From the IMG/VR virus record IMGVR_UViG_3300042350_004191, positions 62,001 through 126,000 of that record: a stretch of 64,000 nucleotides of DNA; one strand, given 5' to 3'. This document shows positions 5,951 to 63,700 of the stretch, in pieces. Numbering within the stretch: the first letter of the stretch is position 1; every line of letters begins with the position of its first letter. A program made the position numbers and the translations under genes. The notes beneath the pieces are model-generated. The model was not told the origin of the DNA. It did no database searches and saw nothing but the letters and a program-made list of their open reading frames with translations.

Positions 5951-6622
5951 ATGCAAAACCAAGCTTATCGCCTTCTTGTGGAAGAACCAACGTATGAAAT
6001 ACAATACTTGGTTGAAGAAAAGAATCGTAATTCACCTTCTAATCTTTATATTCATGGACCGTTCTTAATGGCAAATGAAGCAAACAAAAACAGACGCATA
6101 TATCCATTAGAAGAAATGGTTAAAGAAGTTGATAGATATTCTTCTGAGATGATCAAGGGTAATCGTGCTACAGGTGAATTAAACCATCCACAATCTCCTG
6201 AGATTAATCTTGAGAGAATCTGTCATATGGTGACAGAATTAAAACAAAACGGAAATATCTTTGAGGGTAAGTCAAGAATTCTTTCTACACCTATGGGTCA
6301 GATTGTTAGATCACTTATTCTCGATGGTGTTAAATTAGGCGTTTCTTCAAGAGCACTTGGTAGATTGGATGCTTCTGGTGAATATAATAAAGTTTCAGAT
6401 TTTAGATTAGTTGCTGTGGATGTTGTTGCTGATCCTTCTGTTCCTACAGCATTTGTAAATGGTATCCTTGAATCTAAACAATGGATTCTTTCCGAAAATG
6501 GCAACTTTGAACCATTATTTGATGCATTTGAGAAAAAGATAAGTAATCTTCCAAAAACAAATAAAGATCTATATTTAAAAGAACAAGTGATTGCATTCAT
6601 TAATGCACTCAAAAAAATGTAA
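5951..6622 (+). CDS. gp21: Prohead protease, T4 gp21-like
   Basis: N.NRRIYP, GELNHP, LGVSSRALG and DVVADPS motifs; TGTAAATA at 5926-5933 upstream. Confidence 0.93.
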   Translation: MQNQAYRLLVEEPTYEIQYLVEEKNRNSPSNLYIHGPFLMANEANKNRRIYPLEEMVKEVDRYSSEMIKGNRATGELNHPQSPEINLERICHMVTELKQNGNIFEGKSRILSTPMGQIVRSLILDGVKLGVSSRALGRLDASGEYNKVSDFRLVAVDVVADPSVPTAFVNGILESKQWILSENGNFEPLFDAFEKKISNLPKTNKDLYLKEQVIAFINALKKM

Positions 6623-41789: not shown

Positions 41790-43661
41790 ATGAAAAAAGT
41801 AGGGACTGTATTATTAATAACTCGTTATGGTGGTTTGGGTGATCTCATAATGATGCTTCCGACCATCAAGGCTCTAAAAGAAAAACATAATAATTGTAAA
41901 ATAGTTCTTCGAACATACAAGGATTATGAAAATTTCATAAAAGAATCCCCATTAATTGATCAAGTAGTATTAGATGATAATGGCTATAATCTGTTTACTA
42001 CACACGAAGGAGTTTTTTCTTTAAAAGAAGATAACGCTTTTGCAAGTAAAGATCAAAAAGTCATTCATTACAATTTCCAAGGAGTTATAGAAAACCGTAA
42101 AGACGTTCATGGTGTAATTGCGTTTGCAGAACATGCTAAAGTAAATGTTGTTTTTGATGGAAGTTATGAAAAAAACCTTTTGAATTGGTATGATAGAAAT
42201 AGCGAAAGTCCGTCAATTGTGGTTCAATTAAGAAACGTGGGAGATGGGAGAGATTTAACTATAAAGGATTTACCTTACGAAGAACTTTTAAAAAATAATG
42301 CATATTTTATAGATAAAATTATACCAGATAAAGATTATTTGAACCTAATTGCAAATAGTAAAATTTTTGTTGGTACAAATTCTTCAGGTTTACCTATTGC
42401 TGCCGCAACTCATGTGCCTTGTATGTTTATTTTGTTTAATGAAGAATTTCCTCCTTCAATACGAAGTTACAATGGAGTTTATAATTATACAAATACAAAG
42501 GAACTATCCGCCGATTTATCAAAATATCTTTTAAAAGATTGTCATTACAAGAAGATTGGGTTGTCGATGATAGTTAAAAATGAATCCAGAGTCATTAAAA
42601 GATGTTTGGATAGTGTAAAACCATTGGTTGATTATGTTTGTATATCAGATACGGGTTCAACAGATAATACAATCGAAATAATTGAACAATGGTTAAAAGA
42701 AAACAGTATAAAAGGTGAAGTAAATCGAGAAAAATGGGAAAATTTTGCCTCTAATAGAAGTAAATCATTAGAAAATCTCAGAAAACATAAAGACATTGAC
42801 TATACATTGGTTATAGATGCAGATGAGATATTAAAATTTGATGATAATTTCGATTATTTTAAATTTAAAACTAGTTTAACAGCGGATTTATATAATATTA
42901 CTTGTAAATTTGGTAGTATTGAATATGCAAGGACAAATTTATTCAAAAATTCCAAAAATTTTTATTATAAATGTGTTTTACACGAATATCTGGAATGTTA
43001 TGAGCCTATTTTAAGTCGAGACACTGCAAAAGGCGTATATAATATCCCAATTCAAGATTCTGCCCGAAATACAGATGTTCAAAAATATCAAAATGATGCT
43101 AAATTATTAGAGGAAGCATTAAAAACGGAAAAAGATCCTTATTTAATTCAAAGATATACCTTTTATCTTGCTCAATCGTATAAAGATTGTGAGCAAAATG
43201 GTAAAGCGATCTATTGGTATAACAAAAGAGCCGAATTAGGTGGTTGGGATCAAGAAGTATATTGGTCTTTGTATCAGGTAGCTCGATTAAAAGAAATCAT
43301 GGGCTATCCCGAAGATGATATTGTCCAAAGTTATCTTCGTGCTTATGAAAAATGTACTTCCAGAATCGAAGCATTGCATAATGCTATTAAATTTTGCAGA
43401 ACACATGGTAGAGATCATCAAGCATATATGATTGGAAAATATGCCAAATCATTACCAGTTGATAAAACTGGACTATTTGTAGAAACTTGGATGATAGATT
43501 ATGCTTTAGATGATGAATTTTCTATTGCCTGTTATTGGTCAGGTCACTATGCAGAGGGATTAAAGGTTTCTGAAGAATTAATCAACAAAATACCAGAAGA
43601 TCAAAAACCTAGAATACAACAAAATATACAATTCTTTAAAGAAAAATTACTCGTAAAATGA
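41790..43661 (+). CDS. Fusion of GT9-like domain, GT2 glycosyltransferase and TPR repeats
   Basis: N-terminal RYGGLGDLIMMLP and FVGTNSSG; then LSMIVKNE..I.RCL.SV, DTGSTDNT, NF..NR, IDADE, LHEY; then FYLAQSYKD and related TPR helices. Confidence 0.88.
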   Translation: MKKVGTVLLITRYGGLGDLIMMLPTIKALKEKHNNCKIVLRTYKDYENFIKESPLIDQVVLDDNGYNLFTTHEGVFSLKEDNAFASKDQKVIHYNFQGVIENRKDVHGVIAFAEHAKVNVVFDGSYEKNLLNWYDRNSESPSIVVQLRNVGDGRDLTIKDLPYEELLKNNAYFIDKIIPDKDYLNLIANSKIFVGTNSSGLPIAAATHVPCMFILFNEEFPPSIRSYNGVYNYTNTKELSADLSKYLLKDCHYKKIGLSMIVKNESRVIKRCLDSVKPLVDYVCISDTGSTDNTIEIIEQWLKENSIKGEVNREKWENFASNRSKSLENLRKHKDIDYTLVIDADEILKFDDNFDYFKFKTSLTADLYNITCKFGSIEYARTNLFKNSKNFYYKCVLHEYLECYEPILSRDTAKGVYNIPIQDSARNTDVQKYQNDAKLLEEALKTEKDPYLIQRYTFYLAQSYKDCEQNGKAIYWYNKRAELGGWDQEVYWSLYQVARLKEIMGYPEDDIVQSYLRAYEKCTSRIEALHNAIKFCRTHGRDHQAYMIGKYAKSLPVDKTGLFVETWMIDYALDDEFSIACYWSGHYAEGLKVSEELINKIPEDQKPRIQQNIQFFKEKLLVK

Positions 43662-43857: not shown

Positions 43858-45925
<2,068 letters not shown>

Positions 45926-45945
45926 TAAATATTTATCATTTTTTC

Positions 45946-46284
45946 TTATAAATTATCTTTAATATAGATAACTCTATTAAGATGTTCTCCGTCTGAAAAT
46001 TTTATAAGAATTTCAGCATAGCCTTTGTCTAAATTGATACTAAAGTCTTCATAAGATTCACCTAGATTTTTTGATTCTAAATAAAGACTTTTTACTAAAT
46101 TAATGGCATCTTCGGTATGTAAATTTTCCGCTTTAATTGAGGTAAACCCTGAACTAGGATAAACTAGAGTATATCTTGAATTATCTAATTCTTCATTGTA
46201 ATTTAAATTTAATAAAGTTAAAGAATCTGTTTGTTTATCAAGATAAACATTTAAATACTGATCATATATTTCGACATTTTTCAT
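45946..46284 (-). CDS. Hypothetical protein
   Basis: ORF abuts the protease stop; likely start ATG 46284 (MKNVEIY). Confidence 0.55.
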   Translation of the reverse strand: MKNVEIYDQYLNVYLDKQTDSLTLLNLNYNEELDNSRYTLVYPSSGFTSIKAENLHTEDAINLVKSLYLESKNLGESYEDFSINLDKGYAEILIKFSDGEHLNRVIYIKDNL

Positions 46285-46286
46285 AA

Positions 46287-47510
46287 TTAAATTACTGTTA
46301 AACCAGTTTGCCAATATCTTTTATTTCCTTCGTCAACATATGGCAAATCTGATTTTCCTTCTACATACTTAACTCTTTCTTTCCCTAAATCAGTCAAAGC
46401 TGTAGTTTGTCCATCCCACGACGATAATTGTAATGTTGAACAAATATTATCGATTCTACAAGCATATGATGGACTATTATCTCCTAAATCTGAACCAGCA
46501 AAAGTTAAACCAACCACTTTCCATGCGCTTAAAGATTGGCTTTCTGGATTTATTAAAGCACAAACAGCACTTCCAGAATCTCCACCGCTACTAGCAACAG
46601 TAAATGTTCCTCTATAAGTTAAACATGATGTAAAATTTAAAATATTTCCACTAAAATTAACACCTACAGAAACTCCGACTTGAGTAGCAGTAAGAGAACA
46701 CGATTCAGAACCCCAAGGTATAGAACCTGGCCATCCCACAGGACCAGTTGTTGCACCTGATTTAAAAATTGGATTTTTATTTATGACCAAATTATCAATT
46801 TCAGAGGTAGTGGCAAATTCAAGATTTCCATAATTTAAATTTAATTGTTTAAAAGATGTAAGTGTGTTTACTCTACTTGAATTTGTTATTGCTACAACGG
46901 CTGCATCAATTGTGTTCCCACTTGCTAAAAGCGGAACATACCTTTTTAATTTCATTGTAGATTGATTTGACCAAGGGAAAGCTTGGTATACTGTTGTTTG
47001 TCTATTGCTAAAACTTGAAGACAATAAAGATGCGTCTCTTTCTGTATAAGCAGCAACGTGTGCATTTGTTAATGCAACAAGAGTATTGTCGGTGAGATCT
47101 TTACAGATAAGTCCCATAGTTCCTGTAAATGCACTGTTTCCTAAATTTAATGGATTATCTATTGATATTCTTGTTCCACCGATATATGTTGTTCGAGATG
47201 ATCTATGTAATGAAACGGGTTCAACTGAATCACTAATTTCATAGCAAGATGGGTATGCAACAGCTTGTGGTATTTGAATAACATCAGTAGTAAAAATACT
47301 ACCATCTTCTGTTGTTATTGTTGATGGTAAAATTTCATTTTGTGGAATAGATGATAATGGTTTTTTTTCTGTAACACCAAAAACTATAGAAAGTTCGTTT
47401 GTTAATTTTCCATCAACTTCTTTAAATCCATAACCAACCGAATGAACATATTCTGGAGTTTCTTGTAAAAGCTTTTGTGTAAGCTTTTCTATATTTTCAA
47501 TATTATTCAT
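46287..47510 (-). CDS. Nal1-like trypsin-fold serine protease
   Basis: Triad motifs GTMG...LTNAHV, DAAVV, KSGATTG, GGDSGSAV and VVGLTFAG; N-terminal VGYGFK..G..T....I...V..KKP...L...EILP....TDVI as in Nal1-type proteins. Confidence 0.82.
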   Translation of the reverse strand: MNNIENIEKLTQKLLQETPEYVHSVGYGFKEVDGKLTNELSIVFGVTEKKPLSSIPQNEILPSTITTEDGSIFTTDVIQIPQAVAYPSCYEISDSVEPVSLHRSSRTTYIGGTRISIDNPLNLGNSAFTGTMGLICKDLTDNTLVALTNAHVAAYTERDASLLSSSFSNRQTTVYQAFPWSNQSTMKLKRYVPLLASGNTIDAAVVAITNSSRVNTLTSFKQLNLNYGNLEFATTSEIDNLVINKNPIFKSGATTGPVGWPGSIPWGSESCSLTATQVGVSVGVNFSGNILNFTSCLTYRGTFTVASSGGDSGSAVCALINPESQSLSAWKVVGLTFAGSDLGDNSPSYACRIDNICSTLQLSSWDGQTTALTDLGKERVKYVEGKSDLPYVDEGNKRYWQTGLTVI

Positions 47511-48212
47511 ACGATACAAATGTTGTATATGTTGAAGATGGTATTGTGCTTACAGGTTCATCTATTCTATAAACTTTTATGCCATTAAAATATAAATCAT
47601 TAACAGTTGCTGGTGTTGGATCTGTTCCAGAAATATAAAATTTAAAACCTCTAATATTACTATAACCGTTACGTGTTATATCATTTTCAGTATAAGTTGT
47701 TGAATTTAAAGTTACTGAATAACTATAAGAATTTAAATTAGTTTTTTTCAAAACTATTCTTGCTACCATTGTTGGTGAATAATCTTGTCCTGTGCTTATT
47801 CCATTTATAATATAATTTCCTGCTCCTCCACCACCAACATTAAAATTAAAAACTTCTTGGGACCATTCTGTATCACTGTAAGCACTAAACCCCTTATTTC
47901 CGTTTCTAAAATTTACAGATATTGCTGCGGATAATGCATAACCTACCGACAAACTTGATGGTAAGTTTCTTTTTAAATCTATAAAACTTCCCGCTGGATT
48001 TCCATATGCCCCAAAAGATACTCCATTTGTATCTATTAAATTACCGAATGATTGCCCTATAAATGCACCAGCCGTACCGTTTGATGTAAAATCCCATGCA
48101 TTGAAACCATAACCAAAATTAGATGCTCCAATAAAAGATCCTCCATAGTTATTGGCTCTATCTTCACCAATAACAGAATTCGATCCTGCTAAAGATCCTA
48201 AAAATGTTCTCA

Positions 48213-48213
<1 letters not shown>
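47503..48213 (-). CDS. Beta-sandwich (lectin-like) hypothetical protein
   Basis: Likely start ATG 48213 (MRTFLGSL), TAATG-coupled to the upstream collagen; Gly/aromatic-rich, ends NDLYFNGIKV... Confidence 0.5.
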
Positions 48214-50933
<2,720 letters not shown>

Positions 50934-52220
50934 TTACATTATATTTATCAACAATTCACCATCAATAGTATAAAGCGGTAAACCGTTTATTGAATAAAGT
51001 GCAAGATTGTCAATATAACTAGTAGTTATTTGATTAATTTTTATTCCACTAATTCCTCTAAAAAATGTTGAATCTTTAGATTGTGGAAAAAGATTATTTA
51101 TCTTGTTTTTTATATCTTTAGTCATTCTCCCATAACCTGCTTCATTTTGTACTATAAGATCTAATGTTACTGGATAATCATATGGAAATAAATCTGTATT
51201 TAATTGAGGCAATTCAAAATAAATCAAACCAGAATCATAAGAAAATGCTGAAACAGGAACTGCATTAAATGAAGGATAAATTTGTTCCATATAGGTTCCT
51301 GAAAATGGATTAAAATACGAAACAGGTGTTGTAAAAATGTTTGGATTATCGGCACTTAAGTATAAGTTTGTTAAATTTGAAAAACTTTCACCAAAAACAG
51401 CAACACTTTTATGATCAGTTGTTTGACCAGAAAGAAAATAAAAACTTGTAGGACTTACATATCTAATCTGAGGTCTAGCTGATATGGCTGTGCTAAAAGT
51501 TTCATATTGATCTAGGTCTGTTATTAAATCGTCAGATATTAAATCTTGTTCATTGACCGGAACATAATCTGTATTGATTACATATATCTTTTTATAAGTT
51601 TCTATATAATCTGTACTCTTAAATAACCATCCTTTTATAGTAAAAGAAGTATCTGCTGTCACTCTAAACGATTGGTTTGCCCCTAAATCTGTTGGATATT
51701 GTACGTTTATATTACCAGACCATAATACTTCTGTTCTTATTTCATAATCTTTTCCATAAGACACAGGTAATTTCCAAGATATAACTATATAAGGGTCGCA
51801 ATAAGGAACAAAGTTAGATATAATTTGATCCATATCGGTCTGATATTTGGTTATAATAGTCATATTAATACCAATATTAATCGGAACAGGTTGTCTGATT
51901 CCTTTTATAAATTCTCTTTCATCACCCGCTATAGACAATGCATCAATATTAAAACCACTGTTTTTATTAAAAACTCTAGATTGATCTCTTTGAATCGAAC
52001 CGATGTTTATAGCTACGGCGGGTACAGTTAGACCACCGGGTGCTGGCTTTTTAAGCGTTTCTACAACCCTTTGTTTAGGTGCATATACAAAATTAACTTT
52101 AAATTGACTCTGTGGAATATTACTGTCTTTAGCAAATCTTTTTACTATAATATCATTGAATGCAGAGGTAAATTGCTCAATTAATGTTTGTATTTCTTTA
52201 TTATAAGTCCATTTCTTCAC
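50934..52220 (-). CDS. gp15: Tail terminator/sheath stabiliser, T4 gp15-like, with C-terminal IPT/Ig-like extension
   Basis: F...FNDI.V.R, YAPKQR, D.SR..N, PVPINI...M.I.TK...DMDQII..F.PY, FTIKGWLF; followed by PQIRYVSP...V.GESF. GTG start. Confidence 0.85.
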   Translation of the reverse strand: MKKWTYNKEIQTLIEQFTSAFNDIIVKRFAKDSNIPQSQFKVNFVYAPKQRVVETLKKPAPGGLTVPAVAINIGSIQRDQSRVFNKNSGFNIDALSIAGDEREFIKGIRQPVPINIGINMTIITKYQTDMDQIISNFVPYCDPYIVISWKLPVSYGKDYEIRTEVLWSGNINVQYPTDLGANQSFRVTADTSFTIKGWLFKSTDYIETYKKIYVINTDYVPVNEQDLISDDLITDLDQYETFSTAISARPQIRYVSPTSFYFLSGQTTDHKSVAVFGESFSNLTNLYLSADNPNIFTTPVSYFNPFSGTYMEQIYPSFNAVPVSAFSYDSGLIYFELPQLNTDLFPYDYPVTLDLIVQNEAGYGRMTKDIKNKINNLFPQSKDSTFFRGISGIKINQITTSYIDNLALYSINGLPLYTIDGELLINIM

Positions 52221-54138: not shown

Positions 54139-54496
54139 TTGTTATTTCCTCTATCACTAATATAGTATCACCGAACTTATTATTCCTTTTTGATTTATTA
54201 AATGTACCTCTAAGGACTATTTCAGATTCGGGACAATATCTTGATAAAGATTTTAACCTATAATCAAAATAAATCAAGCCGTCTTCTTTATGTTCTTCGT
54301 GAGAAAATGGTATAGGCAATTCCAGTTTTTCTTTTTTATTTTTACTAGTTAAAATATGAAAAACCAAATAAAAATTTCTTTGAACAAACAATTCAATTTT
54401 ACCTTTTTTTAATATTTTATTTTTAATTTGAAAAGAAACAGTTTTCTGCAATAAAGACTTACACAGTTCTTCCAAGGCTGACGAAGTTATATTCAT
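54131..54496 (-). CDS. Hypothetical protein
   Basis: Overlap-coupled ORF within the operon. Confidence 0.65.
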   Translation of the reverse strand: MNITSSALEELCKSLLQKTVSFQIKNKILKKGKIELFVQRNFYLVFHILTSKNKKEKLELPIPFSHEEHKEDGLIYFDYRLKSLSRYCPESEIVLRGTFNKSKRNNKFGDTILVIEEITNE

Positions 54497-54873
54497 TTAT
54501 TTATAAAATTATATTTTTGTTGTTTTGTCATATTTCTTATTTTTTTATCGAAATACTCCCAAAATTTTTCTTGAGGAAACGTTGGTACGGCTGTAATAAA
54601 ATTAACACCATTAGCTGGAATCATTCTCCAGTCTTGTTTTAAAATATCAAATGCTACAACTAAACCATATTTAATAGCATCGTATGGTAAACTTCCTGTA
54701 GGTGTTGTATAATGAAATGTTGTTCTGCCTAATGCAGAACTCAACAATCTTCGATCATTTGTACATAACATACGTCTTATAGGTTTAGGATTTGGTTTTC
54801 CTCTTCTATTAAAAACTAGTTCTACTAAATGATTATTACAAAGTTGTTGTAACTCATTTCGTGTTAAAATCAT
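54493..54873 (-). CDS. SH3-like (DUF2693/WYL_2-type) protein
   Basis: VELVF.RR...R.MLCT...LVVAFDI.KQDWR pattern. Confidence 0.6.
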   Translation of the reverse strand: MILTRNELQQLCNNHLVELVFNRRGKPNPKPIRRMLCTNDRRLLSSALGRTTFHYTTPTGSLPYDAIKYGLVVAFDILKQDWRMIPANGVNFITAVPTFPQEKFWEYFDKKIRNMTKQQKYNFINK

Positions 54874-55262
54874 TATTTTTTAAATTTAACTTCACAAACA
54901 CCAAATATTCTATTTTCACTAAGAAAAACAATATTTTTGAGGTCATTTATATTTGCTGCTTGAATACCTTTGTCATTAGGGAAAACGATATGGTCGCCCA
55001 CTTTTACAGTTTTACAGTTAGGTCCTGCTAATACAACTTTTCCAACTCTCCAAACAAAGTTTACAGTATTAATTGGGACCCATATGCTTCCTCTTTTAAT
55101 CTCGGTTCCTTCTTCGTTTACATCAACATATTGTACCATTAAAATATCATCCAACACTTTAGTCAGATTCCAGCCGTCGAGTTCTAATGCATGTCCTTGA
55201 TATTGTTCTAGTTGAACTTTACCACCAATTCTATCTTCTAGGTTTTTAGGTCTTTCTATCAT
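54873..55262 (-). CDS. GroES-like co-chaperonin (gp31 analogue)
   Basis: VLDDILMV...GSIWVP...GKVVLAGP.CK.VKVGD.IVFP...FLSE.RIFG. Confidence 0.85.
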   Translation of the reverse strand: MIERPKNLEDRIGGKVQLEQYQGHALELDGWNLTKVLDDILMVQYVDVNEEGTEIKRGSIWVPINTVNFVWRVGKVVLAGPNCKTVKVGDHIVFPNDKGIQAANINDLKNIVFLSENRIFGVCEVKFKK

Positions 55263-55268
55263 ATATGT

Positions 55269-55667
55269 TTATTTAGATATTTGTTTTAATTCTTCAAGTA
55301 TCTGTTTTTGGTTTTTAATTTCTCTTTTAGAGCATTCTCTAAAGATGTGTTCTTGTATTTCGTCCTCATCCTTTGTTTTAGGTTTTTTAATTGTTTTCTT
55401 TTTTAAATATAATAATTTTTTTGTGTATTTTTGTAATAAAACATTTAAAAATTTTGTAATCAATGTTGTATTACCATATAAATCATAATTTAAATACCAT
55501 CTATTAACTGTTTGATTTATAATTTTACAATTTTCTTGATTGGACATAGATAACCATCTCAATAACATAAATGTTGATGGTTTTTCTTCAACTGAAGAAA
55601 TATCTATTTTTGTCTTTTTTAAGATAAAATTTAAAAAACAAAAGATGTCACAGGCTTGATTGTTCAT
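55269..55667 (-). CDS. Probable clamp loader small subunit, T4 gp62-like
   Basis: FMLLRWLSM...IIN..VN followed by a Lys-rich segment and SKREI resembles gp62. Confidence 0.55.
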   Translation of the reverse strand: MNNQACDIFCFLNFILKKTKIDISSVEEKPSTFMLLRWLSMSNQENCKIINQTVNRWYLNYDLYGNTTLITKFLNVLLQKYTKKLLYLKKKTIKKPKTKDEDEIQEHIFRECSKREIKNQKQILEELKQISK

Positions 55668-56188
55668 GTGGTTTTAATTGTATCAATAAACGATACATTT
55701 AACAATTCGTAAAATGTTTTTTCAATTTGTTCACTAAAAGTTTTTTTTGTTTTTTCTACCAAATTAAAAGTTTTATTATCTAGTCCCAAATATCCTAAAA
55801 CAATATTTGATTCTGTTTCTTTATTAATATTGACAGATAAAAGATTGTCTTCATTTTTTTTAACTACTAAATTAAAATCTTTTGTTATCTTTAAATCTTT
55901 AATATCAGTAATTTTTTTTAATTCTTCATATACTTTAGTTATAAAAATTTGTTTAAAAAACGAATTTCCTTTTAAATTTAAGTTAGGTATCTCCCAACAT
56001 ATATGAATTGTGTCTTCAAAAGAAGGATATTCATTTAAAAAATAAGTCGAGTCATAGCCTATGTTTAAAGGTCCATATGCTATGATAATAACTCCGTTTG
56101 GGTTATATTTTTCTTTATAGAAATCAAAACCAAACTTTTGTTTTAATAATAAACCATCATAATTTATAGGGCCGTTTGTGTGTATCAT
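55664..56188 (-). CDS. DUF366-like protein (degenerate)
   Basis: YDG..L....F......G.II..YGP...IHI.WEIP...LSVNI...LG.LGL resembles the DUF366 pattern. Confidence 0.45.
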   Translation of the reverse strand: MIHTNGPINYDGLLLKQKFGFDFYKEKYNPNGVIIIAYGPLNIGYDSTYFLNEYPSFEDTIHICWEIPNLNLKGNSFFKQIFITKVYEELKKITDIKDLKITKDFNLVVKKNEDNLLSVNINKETESNIVLGYLGLDNKTFNLVEKTKKTFSEQIEKTFYELLNVSFIDTIKTT

Positions 56189-56865
56189 AATTTTTTATAT
56201 TCTTTTTTAAAAATTTCATTACTTTTGTTCCAATTTTCTGAAATCATACTATCTCCCATGCCATGATGAACAGTATATATAGGTAATACTCCTACAGGAA
56301 CTTTATATTTGTTACATTCTAAGCAAAATGCCATATCATAATGATGAAATGCAAATTTTTCATTAAATCTAGCAGGAGTATTTTTAATTTTTTCTACGTT
56401 TACTGCTATGAATAGACCATCTATAATCAAACTTCTACTTTTTGTAGGACCAAAAACCGTTGTCCAAATATGATCATCTTTCTTATGAGACACTTCTCCT
56501 ACCATATCTTCTCTTTTTGTTGCTAGATGCCATGCCAACTTGTCTGAATTTAAATCGCAAGATTTAGTTCCAGCCAAACCAGTCACTACATAAGGAGAAT
56601 TATTTAATTTTTCATATAAAAAGATATCGTTCAATTCAACATCATCATGAACAAATAATAAAATTTTATCAGAAAACTCTTCATGGTTTATAAAAGTATT
56701 GTATACTTCTGAAAGACCTTTCTGATTGTCTTTTGCAATTCTAAAATCAAAATTTTCCACACCATGAAGATTGTGGTGCTTTTCTAGAGATTTAAATATG
56801 GGTCTTTTTTGGAACTCTTCTATTGTTTTAGATAAAGTACATATAACCGCAATAACTTGTTTCAT
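56185..56865 (-). CDS. GT-A (GT2-like) glycosyltransferase
   Basis: GLSEVYN, LFVHDDV (DxD-type), GLAG, IDGLFIAV, FHHYDM.FCL, HHG.G. Confidence 0.85.
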   Translation of the reverse strand: MKQVIAVICTLSKTIEEFQKRPIFKSLEKHHNLHGVENFDFRIAKDNQKGLSEVYNTFINHEEFSDKILLFVHDDVELNDIFLYEKLNNSPYVVTGLAGTKSCDLNSDKLAWHLATKREDMVGEVSHKKDDHIWTTVFGPTKSRSLIIDGLFIAVNVEKIKNTPARFNEKFAFHHYDMAFCLECNKYKVPVGVLPIYTVHHGMGDSMISENWNKSNEIFKKEYKKL

Positions 56866-56873
56866 CGACTACT

Positions 56874-56902
56874 ATTTTACACTACATATTTATAATTTTC
56901 AA
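56874..56902 (-). promoter_or_regulatory. sigma70 promoter with a perfect late promoter nested in its spacer
   Basis: Minus strand TTGAAA-17 nt-TAAAAT with TG; TATAAATA at 56887-56894. Confidence 0.65.
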
Positions 56903-56919
56903 GTTTTTGACTTTTTAAA

Positions 56920-56935
56920 GATAAATATAAATAAT
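56920..56935 (+). promoter_or_regulatory. Tandem late promoter GATAAATATAAATAAT
   Basis: Two overlapping TAAATA cores; identical 16-mer at 60730-60745. Confidence 0.65.
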
Positions 56936-56944
56936 ATCATTAAA

Positions 56945-57493
56945 ATGAAAAAATGTAAAAATAAGAAAGAAGTTAATAGAATTCTAAAAAGAAATATAAA
57001 ATCTGATTTATTCGAATCAGACAATATTTTTGCTAAAAGAGTGTTATTTTCTCTAATAGGCGAACAAGAAGAAGCCTCAAAAGCTATTCCAGAAATTGAT
57101 GTAAAGGCTGAACCTGAGAATTTTACTCCTGAACAGAATCAAACTGACTTTGAAAAGTCTTTAGAACCAGAAACACCACAAGATCAATTCGATGTTGAGG
57201 GTGTTTCTACTAAGGTTCACATCGAAAATATCAAAAAAATTAAAAATTTTTCTGATAAATTGGATGAATTCGCTTCTTTCTTGAATGATCCTAACAGTAC
57301 AGAGAGTTTACATAAAATTTTATCAGATAATGATAAAGCTGGCTCTTTGTTGAGAGGTATTACAAGAAAAACTTCTGATGGTATCACCAGAGTAGCTGGT
57401 GAAATCGAAAAACTTAAGGAAGTCTTAAATTCATTCATTATCTTAGCTCCTAAAAAGCTTAGAGATACTGAACAAGTTTCTGTTGGTGGTTAA
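56945..57493 (+). CDS. Hypothetical late protein
   Basis: Start moved to ATG 56945 after the late promoter; acidic linker plus helical C-terminus. Confidence 0.65.
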   Translation: MKKCKNKKEVNRILKRNIKSDLFESDNIFAKRVLFSLIGEQEEASKAIPEIDVKAEPENFTPEQNQTDFEKSLEPETPQDQFDVEGVSTKVHIENIKKIKNFSDKLDEFASFLNDPNSTESLHKILSDNDKAGSLLRGITRKTSDGITRVAGEIEKLKEVLNSFIILAPKKLRDTEQVSVGG

Positions 57494-58446
57494 TTGATAG
57501 TCGAATTGACTATAACGTTATAGTCAATTCCATTTATCCCTTCTTTAACACACCATTCGTTTAGATCCTTATATTCACACCCCACATTCCAGCGAAAAAC
57601 GGCTTCCCCTTTTAATAATAATTGCTTCATTTTTTCTTTGGCTGTTGCATCTAATTTAGGGTTGTCTAATATCCATATCTTTTTATGAAAAGGATATTTG
57701 GATAGTTGTTTCTTTTGGAGATCGGTCAAATTTAAGCCAGCAATTCCTACTCCGTTTTTTATAAACATAGAGTCTATTGGTCCCTCTGTTAAAAATATAT
57801 ATTCAAAATCAGAATCTATGTTGTTTAAATTAAAAATAGGCTTTTCACCACCGGATTTACTCAAATATTTAGGATCTGAGCCATCTAAACATCTTGTTTG
57901 GTAAAATTGTATTTTCTTTTCTACATAAAAAGGTATGCATAACCTATTTTTATGGGTAAAATCTTTCAAACTTATAAAATAATTAGAGCATTTGTTTATT
58001 GCTATGTCTAAACGCCTTTCTTTAATGTAAGAAAGGCTATTTTGTATAATTTTATTTGATTTATAGTAAGACAATTGGACAAGATCACTTAAATTTATAC
58101 TATCATACGGTAAATCTAAATTTTTTCTTTTATAATTGTTTATATTTTCTTTTTTTACAAGTATTTCTTCAGAATCTGAATCACCTAATGCTTCTTGCTT
58201 TATCTCTTCTAATGAAGAATTAGACACTTCGGCTATCCAGTATAGTGCGCTCCATGAACGAGAGCAGTTAAAACAATAAAAAGATTGAGTTTTTGGATAA
58301 AAAAATAATCTTTTCTTTTTACCTAAACTTTTACCTTCTTTACAAATAGGACAACCAGCATTATAAACACCATCTATTCTCTTATAAGAGGGATTATAGC
58401 TATAGGTATAGAACTTCTTAAGTATAAAAGAGTCTGTTAACTTCAT
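57490..58446 (-). CDS. gp61: DNA primase, T4 gp61-like
   Basis: Zn motif CPICKEG...FYCFNC, RLCIPF, QTR, PKYLS, TOPRIM EGPIDSMF, WILDN, KDLNE. Confidence 0.92.
   Translation of the reverse strand: MKLTDSFILKKFYTYSYNPSYKRIDGVYNAGCPICKEGKSLGKKKRLFFYPKTQSFYCFNCSRSWSALYWIAEVSNSSLEEIKQEALGDSDSEEILVKKENINNYKRKNLDLPYDSINLSDLVQLSYYKSNKIIQNSLSYIKERRLDIAINKCSNYFISLKDFTHKNRLCIPFYVEKKIQFYQTRCLDGSDPKYLSKSGGEKPIFNLNNIDSDFEYIFLTEGPIDSMFIKNGVGIAGLNLTDLQKKQLSKYPFHKKIWILDNPKLDATAKEKMKQLLLKGEAVFRWNVGCEYKDLNEWCVKEGINGIDYNVIVNSTIN
57503..57530. repeat. Perfect 28-bp palindrome
   Basis: GAATTGACTATAAC|GTTATAGTCAATTC. Confidence 0.9.
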
Positions 58447-58456
58447 CCTAGCTTAT

Positions 58457-58485
58457 AGGATATAGTATTTTTAACAGAAAATCAA
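58457..58485 (-). promoter_or_regulatory. sigma70-like promoter of primase
   Basis: Minus strand TTGATT-17 nt-TATCCT. Confidence 0.45.
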
Positions 58486-58487
58486 AC

Positions 58488-59363
58488 TTAATATTTGGAA
58501 GATGAGTAAAAATCTTCGTCGCTATCTCTCATAGAAGAGATTCTATCAGCAACTTCAGGGTCTTCCTCTTCAATATCGAATCCTCTTGATGGTATTTCGT
58601 CCTCATCATCAAATTCATCTTTTTCAACTTCAGCAAAAGGCTCTATTACTCCAGATGCTTTGTTAATTTCTAAATGACCGATTTCATTTTCAACTAATTC
58701 GCCTTTAGAAAGTAAATTAGATATAATTTGTTCAGCTACTTCAGGCTCTCTGCCCATTTTTCTGACCAAATATTGAACTACTTCTTCTTTAGACACAGAA
58801 TCCACACCTTGAACCATTCCTAAAACAGCATCTTCGATACTAGATCCTGTTTTTTGTGTAGGTGCTGAATCTAAATCATCCATATCAGACATTTCTGAGT
58901 TTTCATCTGGTTCCATCGTAGGTTCCACACTAGATGCTGTATGAGTTTCTTTCATTTTTTCAAAGAAACTCTTAACAATATTACTCCAACGTCTAGCTAA
59001 TGTAGACATGCCATCTTTATGTCCTTTAAATCTGGTTCTATAAACATCATTTATAATAGAACTTAATTCTGCATAAGGGATAGTTTCAATTTCATCGTTT
59101 AGTAAATTTTCAAATTTACTAACAGTTAAGCGGAGGACCGAATTAACGTCTTCGGGTGAAAGACTTCCCAAATAACTTTTGTTTGACCAATTTTTGATGA
59201 AAGGTACTACGTTATTTTTATAATAATCTGAACTTTGATCACCGATCAAATCTACAATTTTAGACAAATCAAAAGATACGTTTCCATATCTCTGTTCTTT
59301 TGAATGTGTTCCTTCTTGCAATAAAATGTTTTCTACTAAAGTATCGAATCTTAATTTTTTCAT
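58488..59363 (-). CDS. Hypothetical late protein with winged-helix-like C-terminal domain and acidic tail
   Basis: Likely start ATG 59363 (MKKLRFDTL) after GATAAATA at 59378-59385; SKEEVVQYL...VAEQIISNLLSKGELVE. Confidence 0.55.
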   Translation of the reverse strand: MKKLRFDTLVENILLQEGTHSKEQRYGNVSFDLSKIVDLIGDQSSDYYKNNVVPFIKNWSNKSYLGSLSPEDVNSVLRLTVSKFENLLNDEIETIPYAELSSIINDVYRTRFKGHKDGMSTLARRWSNIVKSFFEKMKETHTASSVEPTMEPDENSEMSDMDDLDSAPTQKTGSSIEDAVLGMVQGVDSVSKEEVVQYLVRKMGREPEVAEQIISNLLSKGELVENEIGHLEINKASGVIEPFAEVEKDEFDDEDEIPSRGFDIEEEDPEVADRISSMRDSDEDFYSSSKY

Positions 59364-59385
59364 ATAACTGTTTATATTATTTATC

Positions 59386-60018
59386 TCAAACAATTCCAGT
59401 TAATAAACTTTGATCTTCACCATACGGTTGTCCTTCTTCAGTTAGATAAAGCTGTGTCATTTTAACTCTTTCTTGTGGTGAGCCAAAAATCTCAATTACC
59501 GCTGGACAATCTTCTGCGGGGAAAACTTTTCCTTCAGACTTGTGATAAGAGGCAACAAAAGATTTAAAAATATTATCAATTTCTTCTCTATATTCAGAAT
59601 CAGTCTCACGCATCTCTTTTTCGTTAAGTTCTATAGGAGAAACTTTGGTTAAAGGTATAAAGAAAATAATATCGTATAGTTTTAAGGTTTCTCTTACAAG
59701 TGTTCTGGTTTCTTCTAAAAATTTTTCAGACACTTTCTCTTTTAAAAAGAGCCAAGATGTGTAAACCATATTATCTAATACACATCTATCAAATATTACA
59801 TTGTCTTTTTTAGAAAATTCTATAGCCTGATCCACTAAACTATTAAGAATGGCTCTTTGTGATTCTTCTGTACCATGAGAAGAATGTGGTAAATTTTGTT
59901 CTTTAATAAGAGAACGATAACATTTTTCTGGACAGTGATAGTTTTTCCAAGTCTTTAAAAAGTCTTGAATGTATGTACTTTTACCAGTACAAGATGTTCC
60001 GCATACTGCTATTTTCAT
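59386..60018 (-). CDS. P-loop nucleotide kinase-like ATPase (AAA_28/NadR-like)
   Basis: MKIAVCGTSCTGKST, VIFDRCVLD..VY, YDIIFFIP, R..D..YR..ID. Confidence 0.82.
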   Translation of the reverse strand: MKIAVCGTSCTGKSTYIQDFLKTWKNYHCPEKCYRSLIKEQNLPHSSHGTEESQRAILNSLVDQAIEFSKKDNVIFDRCVLDNMVYTSWLFLKEKVSEKFLEETRTLVRETLKLYDIIFFIPLTKVSPIELNEKEMRETDSEYREEIDNIFKSFVASYHKSEGKVFPAEDCPAVIEIFGSPQERVKMTQLYLTEEGQPYGEDQSLLTGIV

Positions 60019-60293
60019 AAATTTGTTTCCTCTTTCAAGATTTCAGGAAATGTTGATACAATCTTAGGTGTCATTTCATCTAGATATTGTATTTCTTCTT
60101 CCAAATAAGGATTGTGAATATAAACGTTTTTTGGAGAAACTTGTGGGTTTTGTTTTTTTAGTTTATATGCTAATTCAAAAATTGATTCAACGTCTTTTTT
60201 GTCCCATTCAGCACAAACATCACACCCAGACGCAAACAATAAAGCCTCTGTGAGGTATTGAGCATCTTTTTCAGAAACTTTTATGTTTACCAT
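60015..60293 (-). CDS. Hypothetical protein
   Basis: Follows a near-consensus sigma70 promoter; ATGA-type overlap with the kinase gene. Confidence 0.65.
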   Translation of the reverse strand: MVNIKVSEKDAQYLTEALLFASGCDVCAEWDKKDVESIFELAYKLKKQNPQVSPKNVYIHNPYLEEEIQYLDEMTPKIVSTFPEILKEETNL

Positions 60294-60300
60294 ATACTAG

Positions 60301-60329
60301 AGTTTAGTATATGTTACTAAGAATGTCAA
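60301..60329 (-). promoter_or_regulatory. sigma70 promoter
   Basis: Minus strand TTGACA-17 nt-TAAACT, 7 nt before the ATG at 60293. Confidence 0.75.
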
Positions 60330-60694
60330 ATATTTTTTTCAGTAGGAATAGATCTTAACAATTCTTCGATTTGTTTTTCTTTTTCTTGTAAAGTGTCAGC
60401 ATTAACACTACCAGAACTTAAATCTGAAATAATTCTATCAACATTTTCATCTTCTCGATTTAATAAAGATAATAAACGAATTATTTTTTTAACCCAATCT
60501 ACTTTAATACTATCTTCTTCTACTTCGTCTAGTGCTGATGGTTTATTGATGTTTAATTCTTGAGTAGTATCATTAGCATCACCAATATTGGTATCTGGAG
60601 TCATTTCAGGCATAACATCAACATTCTGTTGTTGATCTTGTTCAGCCAAATAATCTTTTGCAATAGTTTTGTATAAATCAGAAAATTGTCCCAT
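60326..60694 (-). CDS. Acidic hypothetical late protein
   Basis: TGTAAATA on the minus strand at 60701-60708; N-terminus MGQFSDLYKTIAKDYLAE. Confidence 0.65.
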   Translation of the reverse strand: MGQFSDLYKTIAKDYLAEQDQQQNVDVMPEMTPDTNIGDANDTTQELNINKPSALDEVEEDSIKVDWVKKIIRLLSLLNREDENVDRIISDLSSGSVNADTLQEKEKQIEELLRSIPTEKNI

Positions 60695-60729
60695 ATGATA
60701 TATTTACAACGTATATGAAATAATTTAAG

Positions 60730-60745
60730 GATAAATATAAATAAT
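60730..60745 (+). promoter_or_regulatory. Tandem late promoter GATAAATATAAATAAT
   Basis: Contains perfect TATAAATA at 60736-60743, 11 nt before the ATG at 60755. Confidence 0.7.
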
Positions 60746-60754
60746 CTATCCAAT

Positions 60755-63700
60755 ATGCAATATATAAGTACCGAAGGTTTATTAATCGATACAGTAAACA
60801 AAGAAGCAAGAATTTTAGGAGTTACTAATACTGTTAGTTCAAATTCTGTTGCTTTTTTAGGAGATAACAATAATACATCTTTTTCTAGTATATCTTTCGG
60901 CGGAACTAGTAATAGCTCTAATAACAATGCTTTAACGGTTGCTGGTTCAAACAACGTTGTGGATGGTTCTTTATCATTTGATAGTACTAGCAGTCAAATA
61001 TCTTCTGATTCAGTTGATTTTAAAAGTATAAACTTAAAATCTCAGGACGGTTCGGTTTCTTTTAAAACAAATTCTAGCAGTTTGACTGCAAGTTTAGGTA
61101 TACAAAGTTCAAACGATGCTATAAACAACAATTCTGCTGCAATTTTAAGTAGGAATAACAATATCAATAACTCTTCTGTTGCAATAAACAGCATTAATAA
61201 CACATTAAATTTAAGTTCTTTTAATGTTTTAACAACCAACAGCAATACAAGAGATAGATCTGCATTGTTTAATTCTCTTTCTACAACAGCATCTCTTTCA
61301 TCTGTTGGTATTTTAGCAAATTTTTCAAATATTCAAAATTCATCTGTTGTATTAAACTCTTTAAGCAGTAATACAAACAACAAATCTATAGAATTTTTAG
61401 GTAATAACAACACAGTTACACAAAATTCTTTAGGAATAAATTCAACAAATACTAATATAAACAACAATTCTGTTAGTATAGGGGGAACCAATAATTTTGT
61501 TTCCGTTAATTCATTAAACATCAATTCTTCAGCATCAAATATTACAAATCAATCAGAAGGATTGTTTTTAGATAGAACCACATTAGATAATAATTCTTTT
61601 AGTATTGGTGGTAGTGGAAATAACATAAGAAATTCTTCGATTGGTATCAATCCTTTAAGTTCTAACATACTTGAAAGCTCAGTAGGAATTTATACTGTAA
61701 GAAATACAGTAAACAATAAATCTTTTGCTGTAAATGCGGACACAACTACGGTCAACCTTAGTTCTTTAGGTATAAATGTATCTGAATCTAATATTAATAA
61801 TCAATCAGAAGGCATTTACTTAAACAAGACTAATGTAAACAATAATTCTATTGCTATAGGAAGTGATAGTATAAATGTTTCAGATCGTTCTTTTGTTTTA
61901 AATACAACAAATTCTAATGTATCTAGCAATTCTTATGGAGCTTTTACTAATAATACCAACCTAAACCTCAGTTCATTTGCGATTGGTGGTTTTAATAATA
62001 CGCTGGCAAACAGATCTTTCGGTATTAATTCAAATACATCCAACATATCTAGTAATTCTGTTGGGATTTATACTACAAATACAAATGTAAACCTTAGTTC
62101 ATTCGCAGTCGGTGGTCGGAATAATACTGTGGTGAATAATTCTTTTGGTTTGAATTCTTTAAATTCAAACATATCTGGTAATTCTGTAGGGATAAATGTA
62201 AATTCATCTAATTTACTATTGAGTTCATTAGGTATAAACTCTTTAAACAGTTCTATAACTTCAGGCTTTGCTCACAATTCAATTAGCGTACAATCCATAA
62301 GCTCTATAGCATTAAACACGACAAATTCTCAATTGAGCAGTTCTGTTATTGTAATAGGTAACAATAATGCAGTGAACAATTCAGTATTGTTTAATGGTAA
62401 TAACAATCTTACACAGGACAATTCGGTTGCGATTTCTTCTAATTCAAACAATCTAAGTGCAAATGCATTTTCTACATTATCAAATACTGTAACAGCAAGA
62501 AGAAATGCTACTGTTTTTAATTCTACAAACAGCGTAGTATCTTCGAATGCAATACAAATAAATGGTATTAATAACAATGTTGATAATAATAGTATTTCTA
62601 TTTTAGGAAGCACAAATACTATAACCTTAACCTCTGTTGGTATTGTTTCTGATGTTAGTAGAATCATTAACAACTCAACAAACATTAACAGTTTAAGAAA
62701 TATTGTTTCTGCAAGATCTGTTTCAATAAACACAGGTTCTACAACTTTGATAGATAAAGGAATTGCAATCGGTTCTTTAAATTCAAACGTATCTACTGGT
62801 TCTATAAGTTTTAATAGTAATAGCGTAATTTTACAATTAAGTGGTATAGATATATCTGGACGCAGTAATACTGTCCAAAATAGATCCACAAATATAAACG
62901 GAAGTAATAACACGGTCCAAAATGACAGTGCTACATTTAATACTATAAACAGTACAGCCTCTGCAAATTCACTAATCTTTGGTGGTGGCTTAAACAGATC
63001 AGTTATCAATTCACTTGTAATGAATTCAAGTGGTAGTAGAGCATCTGATGGTAGTTCTGTCATAGGTGGAAGATCTACTACCGCAAATTTAAGTTCTGCT
63101 GCAATTAATACATTCAATTCTCAAATAAATGGCATTAACTCTTTAGTTTTGGGTGGTAGTGGTCATAATTTTAGATCAGGAAATTCTGTATATTTAGGCG
63201 GTAAAGATAACGAAGCTGCTTCTACATACGGAGGAACTACCATTGGTGATAAATCTATAATTTTAGGTGGTGAAAAGGTTAGAATAGGATCTAATAGTAT
63301 TGCAGTTGGAGGACTAAACAACAATTTACAAAATGGTTCTATTACACTCGGTGGTAGTGGAAATGATACAGCATCTTTCAGTAATGTTGTTATTATAGGA
63401 AGAAACAACGTGACAGCAAACAGGGGTGACATAGTTTATCTTCCTGAAATTAATGCTTTGGGTAACTTAACAATCACAGGTAACGTATCCGCTTCTGGTA
63501 CATTTACAAATGTCAGTACTACCACAGGCACAGTTTCTTCTTTGGAATTAAATAACCTTTTATATCCTTTACATACTCTGGTTGTTAATCAAAACACACA
63601 AGCAGGAAATACTTTTGAAACTGCATTGTTTAGTTTTTACAACAACCCAAGAATGTCTGTTAACAACACTGGCGTTGCAATTAATACATTTGAAAGAACA

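What the first reader, a model, noticed from the sequence alone, without database searches (positions are those of the whole stretch)
46287..47510. Nal1-type serine protease embedded in the collagen fibre operon
The protein has intact trypsin-fold triad motifs (TNAHV, DAAVV, GGDSGS) and the N-terminal domain pattern of plant NARROW LEAF1-like and related bacterial proteases. It overlaps the lectin-like gene upstream and sits between collagen genes, separate from the head protease gp21. Inference: either a fibre-maturation protease or a virion-displayed enzyme that cuts a proteinaceous host layer such as an S-layer or matrix.
Basis: partly seen in the sequence, partly recalled or inferred. Interest (0 to 1): 0.62.

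Follow-up and report, generated by a model that had tools for sequence, protein, structure and literature searches.

The report
Phage NAL1-like protease with docking partner
A tailed phage carries a plant-NAL1-like serine protease inside its fibre genes, and the gene just upstream ends in a short conserved tail that seems to plug into the protease, which suggests phages can hang a protein-cutting enzyme on their fibres.

Summary
On the minus strand, 46287-47510 encodes a 407-aa protein with an intact His151/Asp202/Ser312 triad. A profile of its family hits rice NAL1 (E 6e-10). The AF2 model (pLDDT 85.5) aligns to NAL1 residues 91-457 at Z about 30. So it equals the NAL1 ATP-binding domain plus protease domain, lacks the hexamer-forming N-terminus, and adds a 35-residue C-terminal mini-domain. 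The family is large: at least 221 IMG/VR contigs carry it. No match was found in 50,697 GenBank phage records. Collagen neighbours occur in only three of 43 clades. The conserved feature is different. The gene immediately upstream ends in a flexible, often Pro/Thr-rich linker followed by a short strand motif (here TYTTFVSYE). Its tail resembles the tails of other clades in 33 of 42 clades, above the 99th percentile of 542 control tails. Proteases carry the motif themselves mainly when another protease gene follows. A controlled complex prediction passed (0.73 against best control 0.48). It put only that tail into the protease's C-terminal mini-domain. Best reading, about 45%: a fibre-tethered virion protease. 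Main rival: a dedicated processing protease for the upstream protein. No experiment exists.

The parts
46287..47510 (-). NAL1-like serine protease gene, 407 aa plus stop
   Evidence: ORF and translation. 121 homologues. Profile hit to NAL1 structures at E 6e-10. AF2 pLDDT 85.5, pTM 0.89. NAL1 Z 26-31.
47211..47510 (-). N-terminal domain (about res 1-100), the counterpart of the NAL1 ATP-binding domain
   Evidence: Aligned to NAL1 residues 91 onwards. The HMM alignment places phage K30, K49, D76 and V77 on the NAL1 ATP/Mg ligands R120, K139, D166 and V167 (PMC12012508). These are the (near-)invariant residues of the phage domain. 12 of 36 members hit Pfam NAL1_N.
46410..47192 (-). Chymotrypsin-fold protease domain (res 107-367) with triad His151 (47058-47060), Asp202 (46905-46907) and Ser312 (46575-46577)
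   Evidence: VIA-align to SGPB and alpha-lytic protease: Z 18-19, rmsd 1.9-2.2 A, 184-188 residues. Triad invariant. Codons checked.
46290..46394 (-). C-terminal mini-domain (res 373-407, ...RVKYVEGK...GNKRYWQTGLTVI), the predicted socket for the partner's tail
   Evidence: Conserved GKxYWQxG block. Model residues beyond about 373-379 fall outside the aligned NAL1 ranges. Residues 373-387, 391-392 and 397-407 form the predicted interface.
47503..48213 (-). Upstream partner gene, 236 aa from ATG 48213 (ORF opens at TTG 48240). Beta-rich, family unknown.
   Evidence: ORF. Start fits the orthologues and the JGI gene calls. The domain recurs inside 1074- and 1263-aa proteins next to the protease in L084.
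47506..47544 (-). C-terminal docking tail of the partner (res 224-236, IPSSTYTTFVSYE)
   Evidence: The same tail type ends the gene upstream of the protease in most clades. It is the only part of the partner in the predicted interface.
45946..46284 (-). Small acidic protein, 112 aa from ATG 46284, unknown function, co-conserved with the module
   Evidence: Orthologues in L001-L009 and a 49.5%-identical homologue in L084, which also holds the 236-aa-like domain and a protease. No family.
43858..45921 (-). Collagen-like fibre protein, 687 aa
   Evidence: Pfam Collagen E 2.1e-34; PHROG tail-fibre families.
48213..49682 (-). Collagen-like fibre protein, 489 aa
   Evidence: Pfam Collagen E 2.6e-21; PHROG tail-fibre families.
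49689..50927 (-). Collagen-like fibre protein, 412 aa
   Evidence: Pfam Collagen E 4.8e-11. Shares a C-terminal domain with the 687-aa collagen.
50934..52220 (-). T4 gp15-type tail sheath stabiliser, heading the fibre gene run
   Evidence: Pfam T4-gp15_tss E 3.8e-21; phrog_227 E 2.2e-20.

Best explanation
The gene encodes a probably active serine protease of the NAL1 type: an ATP-binding-like N-domain plus a chymotrypsin-fold domain. It belongs to a large family known only from uncultured tailed phages. My reading is that it is a late, virion-borne enzyme held on a fibre without a covalent link. The protein encoded immediately upstream (236 aa here) ends in a short linker and a beta-strand tail (TYTTFVSYE). 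That tail inserts into a socket formed by the protease's extra C-terminal mini-domain (res 373-407) and nearby basic residues (K189, R190). The protease would then sit at the outer end of the fibre or adaptor and cut a protein on the host surface during adsorption. Shown: the fold, the invariant triad, the family range, the gene pairing and the tail motif. Predicted by a model: the docking. Inferred: the place in the virion, trimer formation as in NAL1, and the substrate.
For: Identity: a profile of 36 members hits nine NAL1 entries at E 6e-10 to 3e-9. The model has pLDDT 85.5. NAL1 scores Z 26-31 over model 1-373 against NAL1 91-457, while other S1 proteases score Z 19. Triad and GDSGS are invariant. 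Context: at least 221 viral contigs carry the family. Neighbours within two genes are 93% co-directional. 33% of them are 600 aa or longer, against 7.9% of ORFs more than four genes away. 33 of 43 clades have such a neighbour. Named neighbours include a baseplate wedge protein, gp15 and Phage_tail_C, and collagen. Pairing: a post hoc motif hits the last 14 residues of 49 of 86 upstream neighbours, against 2 of 1208 other non-protease ORFs. A regex-free test across 42 clades gives median similarity 25.0 against 12.2 for 542 control tails (p 1.5e-20). 33 of 42 lie above the control 99th percentile, and the window tail (24.6) exceeds every control. Grammar: proteases followed by another protease carry the tail in 4 of 6 cases, against 1 of 49 otherwise. 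L061 reads X-tail, then P-tail, P-tail, P-tail, then P without a tail, and this happens twice. Docking: complex prediction scored 0.73 (runs 0.57, 0.73, 0.75) against a best control of 0.48. That mark was reached by 58 of 80 solved complexes and 2 of 110 mismatched pairs, though these counts hold only roughly because my own alignments were used. Contact agreement was at least 80% and partner pLDDT at least 76. The interface is partner residues 224-236 only, against protease 373-387, 391-392 and 397-407 plus 140-141, 160, 168, 170, 189-190 and 207. The triad residues are not in it. Surface location: when the protease is fused, it is always N-terminal, and the C-terminal extensions are binding-type domains: BNR/sortilin propeller, PEBP, fn3 plus cadherin, and FGE-sulfatase (lectin-like fold).
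Against: There is no proteomic, biochemical or genetic evidence, and no cultured phage carries the gene. The complex is a model. The partner alignment has 5 close sequences, and one control reached 0.48. A docking tail fits a substrate-recognition tag equally well. In rice, the NAL1 construct that lacks the N-terminus, which is the part this protein matches, is a trimer with a misaligned triad and impaired activity (PMC12012508). Triad geometry could not be measured because no coordinates were available. How the 236-aa partner is fixed to the virion is unknown, and its fold could not be predicted. Tail similarity tracks the whole protease, not the mini-domain in particular. The host and any surface protein layer are unknown.
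Confidence: 0.45

Rival explanations
1. A dedicated maturation or assembly protease. The C-terminal mini-domain reads the tail of the upstream fibre or adaptor protein as a recognition tag, as tail-specific proteases read C-termini. The enzyme then trims or releases that protein, or chaperones its folding, and is not part of the finished virion.
For: The gene sits directly downstream of its partner, where fibre chaperones such as Tfa and gp38 are usually encoded (established knowledge). The predicted contact is with the partner's extreme C-terminus. The pairing is strict. HtrA/DegS-type proteases appear among the fold matches at Z about 14, including DegS entries solved with bound C-terminal peptides.
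Against: One protease gene per tail-bearing gene, including chains of up to four protease genes in a row, fits stoichiometric binding better than catalysis. Long Pro/Thr linkers before the tail serve no purpose for a tag but suit a tether. Binding-type domains lie C-terminal to the protease in fused members. The tail is not modelled in the active site.
Confidence: 0.25
2. An intracellular protease that degrades host or phage regulators during infection, like plant NAL1. Its place among fibre genes would be incidental.
For: NAL1 itself degrades transcription factors inside a cage (PMC12012508). There is no signal peptide.
Against: Linkage to large co-directional structural-type genes holds in 33 of 43 clades. 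The tail pairing is conserved. The NAL1 N-terminus needed for the cage is absent. The fused extensions are of extracellular type.
Confidence: 0.08
3. A virion-associated cell-wall endopeptidase that cuts peptidoglycan peptide bridges, like the bacteriolytic alpha-lytic-type proteases of Lysobacter.
For: After NAL1, the closest catalytic domains are alpha-lytic protease, Lysobacter L1 and L5, and SGPB (Z 18-19).
Against: An enzyme tethered to fibres or the neck would not reach the wall before the envelope is pierced. In T4-type phages the wall enzyme sits on the tail tip (established knowledge). No wall-binding domain was found.
Confidence: 0.07
4. A structural or adhesin module that keeps the protease fold but works by binding, not cutting.
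For: It is encoded like a fibre segment, and it can be chained and fused to binding domains.
Against: His, Asp, Ser and the GDSGS oxyanion motif are invariant across members that share only about 30% identity. That is not expected without catalysis.
Confidence: 0.08

Closest known systems
Rice NARROW LEAF 1 (NAL1; PDB 7Y77, 8PMM, 8PN2, 8HAU)
   Same: Same two-domain core: a small ATP-binding-type domain followed by a chymotrypsin-fold domain with a His-Asp-Ser triad. Z 26-31, 304-324 residues aligned. The TN(A/H)HV and GDSGS motifs align. Four NAL1 ATP/Mg ligand positions are conserved.
   Different: Only 15-17% identity. It lacks NAL1 residues 1-90, which build the hexameric cage needed for activity (PMC12012508). 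It adds a 35-residue C-terminal mini-domain. It is viral, encoded among fibre genes, and paired with a tail-bearing partner.
Alpha-lytic protease / Streptomyces griseus protease B group of secreted bacterial S1 proteases
   Same: The catalytic domain superposes at rmsd 1.9-2.2 A over 184-188 residues, Z 18-19.
   Different: These have no N-terminal ATP-binding-type domain and no C-terminal socket. They are made with a pro-region and secreted.
HtrA/DegS proteases with PDZ domains
   Same: A chymotrypsin-fold protease whose accessory C-terminal domain binds the C-terminal strand of another protein. Fold matches at Z about 14 include DegS entries solved with bound peptides. This is a likeness in how it may work.
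   Different: No PDZ fold was shown here and the mini-domain is much smaller. DegS is a membrane stress sensor. Membership was neither tested nor claimed.
Phage tail fibre plus downstream tip protein or chaperone (T4 gp37/gp38, lambda Stf/Tfa, Mu S/U)
   Same: Same gene order: the fibre gene is followed by a protein that binds the fibre's C-terminal end (established knowledge).
   Different: Here the downstream protein is a protease with an intact triad. The binding element is a short terminal strand after a flexible linker.
Cohesin-dockerin assembly of cellulosomes
   Same: An analogy only: enzymes joined to scaffolds by a small terminal docking element that follows a Pro/Thr-rich linker, which allows chains.
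   Different: Unrelated sequences and folds. Bacterial, not viral.
Peptidase_S74 intramolecular chaperone of endosialidase-type tailspikes and fibres
   Same: A serine protease tied to phage fibre biogenesis.
   Different: S74 is a C-terminal domain in the same chain that cuts itself off with a Ser-Lys dyad. Here the protease is a separate gene, or N-terminal when fused, with a His-Asp-Ser triad.

Membership tests
NAL1-like serine proteases (Pfam NAL1_N plus chymotrypsin-fold domain) | N-terminal ATP-binding-type domain homologous to NAL1 89-172 | tested here: met
   The window protein alone is below the Pfam threshold (14 bits against 27, E 0.043). The 36-member profile hits NAL1 chains at E 6e-10 over this domain. 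12 of 36 members hit NAL1_N. The fold aligns from NAL1 residue 91.
NAL1-like serine proteases (Pfam NAL1_N plus chymotrypsin-fold domain) | His-Asp-Ser triad in a two-barrel protease domain | tested here: met
   H151, D202 and S312 are invariant. TNAHV aligns with the NAL1 TN(R/H)HV motif and GDSGS with the NAL1 GDSGS motif. The triad distances in the model could not be measured.
NAL1-like serine proteases (Pfam NAL1_N plus chymotrypsin-fold domain) | ATP/Mg-binding residues (R120, R122, K123, K139, D166, V167) | tested here: inconclusive
   K30, K49, D76 and V77 match R120, K139, D166 and V167 and are (near-)invariant. R122 and K123 correspond to V32 and D33. Binding was not tested.
NAL1-like serine proteases (Pfam NAL1_N plus chymotrypsin-fold domain) | N-terminal region (1-88) that joins two trimers into the active hexameric cage | tested here: not met
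   The protein starts at the position equivalent to NAL1 residue 91. So it is a relative with the same core, not a NAL1-type cage protease. The oligomeric state was not tested.
Clan PA / S1 chymotrypsin-fold serine proteases | Double beta-barrel fold with catalytic residues in the order His, Asp, Ser and a GDSG oxyanion motif | tested here: met
   Z 18-19 and rmsd about 2 A to SGPB and alpha-lytic protease over their whole length. Motifs present.
Clan PA / S1 chymotrypsin-fold serine proteases | Proteolytic activity | not testable with these tools
   Needs an enzyme assay with an S312A control.
Phage virion (tail or fibre) proteins | Encoded within the tail, baseplate or fibre gene module | tested here: met
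   In the window the order is gp15, three collagen genes, partner and protease. Elsewhere the neighbours include a baseplate wedge protein, gp25, Phage_tail_C and very large proteins.
Phage virion (tail or fibre) proteins | Physically present in purified particles | not testable with these tools
   No cultured phage carries it. A homologue occurs in a Tara <0.22 um fraction metagenome, which shows DNA only.

The most novel reading that the evidence does not exclude
Uncultured aquatic phages have a plug-and-socket system. A short C-terminal strand after a flexible linker plugs into a mini-domain on a NAL1-like serine protease. Fibres could then carry one protease or daisy-chains of several, some tipped with binding domains. 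That would be a new class of virion-borne proteolytic 'depolymerases' aimed at host surface proteins. It would also be the viral counterpart of a protease known so far from plant development.
Probability: 0.35. Interest if true: 0.75.

Novelty: new variant of a known kind. Interest (0 to 1): 0.6.

Why it matters
Phage enzymes that clear a path to the cell are nearly all glycan- or wall-degrading. Proteases displayed on virions are rare and poorly documented. A widespread, modular and chainable protease module on fibres would add a new tool to the known adsorption repertoire. It would point to protein surface layers as targets in aquatic hosts. It would also offer a simple docking pair (tail peptide and socket) for engineering. 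Finally, it gives plant NAL1 its first well-defined viral relatives, whose conserved ATP-ligand positions can be tested directly.

Tried and rejected
1. tblastn of the window protease and two distant members (P0051, P0034) against 50,697 GenBank phage records found nothing. No cultured example or virion proteome could be used.
2. phmmer of the single protein against PDB gave only chance hits. The family profile was needed.
3. NCBIfam gave nothing.
4. The search for related loci in genome contigs with A1 failed because it found no sufficiently conserved stretch. Occurrence in cellular genomes is therefore untested.
5. The AF2 model of the 236-aa partner was unusable (pLDDT 38), and the Atlas feature search gave no reliable family. 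'Lectin-like' is left open.
6. The Atlas search for the 112-aa protein gave only TM below 0.5 on a poor model.
7. The 122-aa genes downstream of the protease in another clade are unrelated to the window's small protein (hhalign probability 0.1%).
8. The first 'conserved C-terminal domain' cluster of upstream proteins turned out to be low-complexity Pro/Thr linker. Only the terminal strand is a true motif.
9. A partial Mantel test gave no co-variation specific to the mini-domain. Tails co-diverge with the whole protease.
10. T4 late-promoter (TATAAATA), sigma-70 and terminator scans were at or below chance and say nothing about timing.
11. Literature searches found no paper on NAL1-like proteases in phages.
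12. Collagens as the family's conserved partner: rejected, because collagen neighbours occur in only 3 of 43 clades.
Not used: the large representative search (costly and not needed), reads tools, and other genetic codes.

Full report
**What is there.** The finding's coordinates hold a real gene, on the minus strand. The frame is open from 47519 (TTG). The ATG at 47510 gives a 407-aa protein whose N-terminus matches its homologues. They mark His151, Asp202 and Ser312 (codons checked). The start overlaps the end of the upstream gene by 8 nt. The record behind the window is a 210.6-kb virus genome, estimated 99% complete, with 32% G+C and one copy of this gene. It is a distant T4-like myovirus (gp15 and gp21 homologues). 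The minus-strand run is tightly packed:
- helicase
- gp15
- collagen-like, 412 aa
- collagen-like, 489 aa
- 236-aa protein
- protease
- 112-aa protein
- collagen-like, 687 aa

**What the protein is.** Single-sequence tools say little:
- Pfam NAL1_N at 14 bits, below the 27-bit cut-off
- a PHROG 'protease' family at E 1.5e-7, covering the N-terminus only
- nothing in NCBIfam, PDB or GenBank phages

The word-index search found 121 relatives, mostly 400-430 aa and full length. In an alignment of 36 of them (A1), the triad and the GDSGS motif are invariant at 30-35% identity. The A1 profile hits nine rice NAL1 entries at E 6e-10 to 3e-9. It aligns the N-domain, the TN-x-HV motif and the GDSGS motif. 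The AF2 model is confident (pLDDT 85.5, pTM 0.89). Foldseek ranks NAL1 first (E 2.5e-15). VIA-align gives NAL1 Z 26-31 (rmsd 3.0-3.5 A, 304-324 residues), mapping model 1-373 onto NAL1 91-457. The next group, SGPB and alpha-lytic protease, scores Z 18-19 and covers only model 107-367.

So the protein equals the NAL1 ATP-binding domain plus its protease domain. It lacks NAL1 residues 1-90. In rice, those residues join two trimers into the hexameric cage that activity requires (PMC12012508). The invariant residues of the phage N-domain (K30, K49, D76, V77) fall on the NAL1 ATP/Mg ligands R120, K139, D166 and V167, while R122 and K123 are not kept. Residues 374-407 have no NAL1 counterpart. They carry a family-wide GKxYWQxG block.

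**Where the family lives.** A scan of IMG/VR found 221 viral contigs that encode a relative, and 80 loci were fetched. One homologue comes from a Tara <0.22 um sample. I called ORFs in all loci and grouped the proteases into 43 clades at 60% identity. Neighbours within two genes are 93% co-directional. 33% of them are 600 aa or longer, against 7.9% of ORFs more than four genes away. 33 of 43 clades have such a neighbour. The nameable neighbours are baseplate wedge protein, gp25, gp15, Phage_tail_C, Gly_rich_2, FG-GAP and BNR. Collagen neighbours occur only in the window's own clade and in L021, L072 and L074. Collagen is therefore not the conserved partner.

**The unexpected regularity.** The gene directly upstream of the protease varies from about 100 to 3100 aa. 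It nearly always ends the same way: a flexible stretch, often tens of Pro/Thr residues, followed by a short alternating strand and then 0-4 residues. Examples are NTIYVHTP, NTVFVSYTIL, NQIYVSYE and NTLFIHIPTI. In the window it is STYTTFVSYE.
- A post hoc pattern hits 49 of 86 upstream neighbours, against 2 of 1208 other non-protease ORFs.
- A pattern-free test compared each clade's 12-residue tail with the tails of other clades. The median score is 25.0, against 12.2 for 542 control tails (Mann-Whitney p 1.5e-20).
- 33 of 42 clades lie above the control 99th percentile. The window's tail (24.6) exceeds every control.

The rule extends to the proteases themselves. Those followed by another protease gene carry the tail (4 of 6), and those not followed do not (1 of 49). 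Locus L061 reads 171 aa, then 861P-tail, 895PP-tail, 438P-tail and 421P. A second chain reads 920-tail, 434P-tail and 401P. Each chain ends in a protease without a tail. When the protease is fused to something else, it is always N-terminal. The added C-terminal parts are binding-type domains: BNR/sortilin propeller, PEBP, fn3 plus cadherin, and FGE-sulfatase.

**Docking test.** I recorded the hypothesis that the tail docks on the protease before running the test (note).
- It passed: score 0.73 (runs 0.57, 0.73, 0.75) against a best control of 0.48.
- That mark was reached by 58 of 80 solved complexes and 2 of 110 mismatched pairs. These counts hold only roughly, because my own alignments were used.
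- Contact agreement was at least 80% and partner pLDDT at least 76.
- The confident interface uses only partner residues 224-236, which is the tail. On the protease it uses residues 373-387, 391-392 and 397-407, which is the extra mini-domain, plus a few residues that include the conserved K189 and R190.
- The triad residues are not in the interface.

Two features that had no explanation are thus predicted to be each other's ligands. This is a model's confidence, not a measurement.

**Mechanism.** My best reading (about 0.45) is a tether. The protease is a late virion component plugged onto the C-terminal tail of a fibre or adaptor protein, probably as a trimer like NAL1 (inferred). It cuts a host surface protein during adsorption. 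Four points favour this reading over the alternatives:
- The gene pairing is one-to-one.
- Proteases form chains of paralogues.
- Long linkers precede the tail.
- Distal binding domains follow the protease in fused members.

The main rival (0.25) is that the socket reads the tail as a tag and the enzyme processes or chaperones the upstream protein. This fits the gene order, which resembles fibre-chaperone pairs, and it fits the docking equally well. Minor rivals are an intracellular regulator-degrading protease, a wall endopeptidase, and a non-catalytic adhesin. The invariant triad argues against the last.

**Limits.**
- There is no virion proteomics and no cultured phage with the gene.
- The host is unknown, so the S-layer idea is open.
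- Triad geometry could not be measured because no coordinates were available.
- The partner's fold and its own attachment to the virion are unknown.
- Tail similarity tracks the whole protease rather than the socket in particular.
- In rice, the N-terminally truncated NAL1 trimer is poorly active. The phage enzyme may need its partner or another contact to become active. This is speculation.

**Comparison and novelty.** It shares the NAL1 core but fails the cage-forming feature. I therefore file it as a viral relative of NAL1, not as a NAL1-type cage protease. In how it may work, it resembles HtrA/DegS (a C-terminal strand bound by an accessory domain), fibre and tip-protein pairs, and, by analogy, cohesin-dockerin assembly. 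No paper in the searched library links NAL1-like proteases to phages. I rate it a new variant of a known kind, interest 0.6.

**Housekeeping.** No reads tool, no other genetic code and no large representative search were used. 

Noticed in passing
L061:4169-17852 (IMGVR_UViG_3300016472_000307): Six adjacent or near-adjacent genes carry seven NAL1-like protease modules, and one 895-aa protein holds two. They form two chains, and every member except the last in each chain ends in the docking-type tail.
   Followed up: partly
window 43858-45921 (res 536-666) and 49689-50927 (res 258-390); L030, L032 and L035 gene at L035:11276-11866: Two of the collagen-like proteins share a C-terminal globular domain. 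A 196-aa protein with the same domain is encoded directly downstream of the protease homologue in a distant phage group with about 32% protease identity.
   Followed up: partly
G000 54349-62921 and 65753-66547 (partly before the window; window 1-921 and 3753-4547), plus the three collagen genes near the protease: The genome encodes seven collagen-repeat proteins, of up to 1398 aa. That is an unusually heavy use of collagen-like fibres for a T4-like phage.
   Followed up: no
window 41790-43661 (+): A 623-aa glycosyltransferase (phrog_13126, beta-1,4-glycosyltransferase, E 4e-27) converges on the end of the fibre operon. Relatives keep a Glycos_transf_2 gene at the same spot (L001, L002). It may glycosylate the collagen or Pro/Thr-rich fibre proteins.
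   Followed up: no
L084:306-9034: A distant phage keeps all three window gene families together: a 1263-aa and a 1074-aa protein each holding the 236-aa-like domain, a 112-aa protein 49.5% identical to the window's small protein, and the protease. Here the upstream protein ends in a different tail class (GIISILDY) after a well-conserved 110-aa C-terminal domain, which is shared with L005, L014, L049 and L054.
   Followed up: partly
window 45524-45928 (+), 49534-49869 (+), 50478-50888 (+): These long antisense ORFs (Pro-Val or Cys/Ser/Thr-rich) are mirror images of the collagen GXY repeats. They are artefacts, not genes.
   Followed up: yes
alignment A1; window protease Cys89 and Cys351: Cys89 is invariant, and the Cys of the ACRID motif is kept in most members. 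Many members also pair a Cys before the YWQ block with a Cys at their own C-terminus (...NNPC). These could be disulfides, which would fit an extracellular enzyme. Distances could not be checked.
   Followed up: no
window 54873-55262 (-): A GroES-like co-chaperonin (phrog_3188, E 1.4e-6) lies upstream in the same minus-strand gene run.
   Followed up: no
window 5957-6478 (+): The T4 gp21-type prohead protease (Peptidase_S77, E 3.2e-30) is present. The fibre-module protease is therefore a second, unrelated protease.
   Followed up: yes
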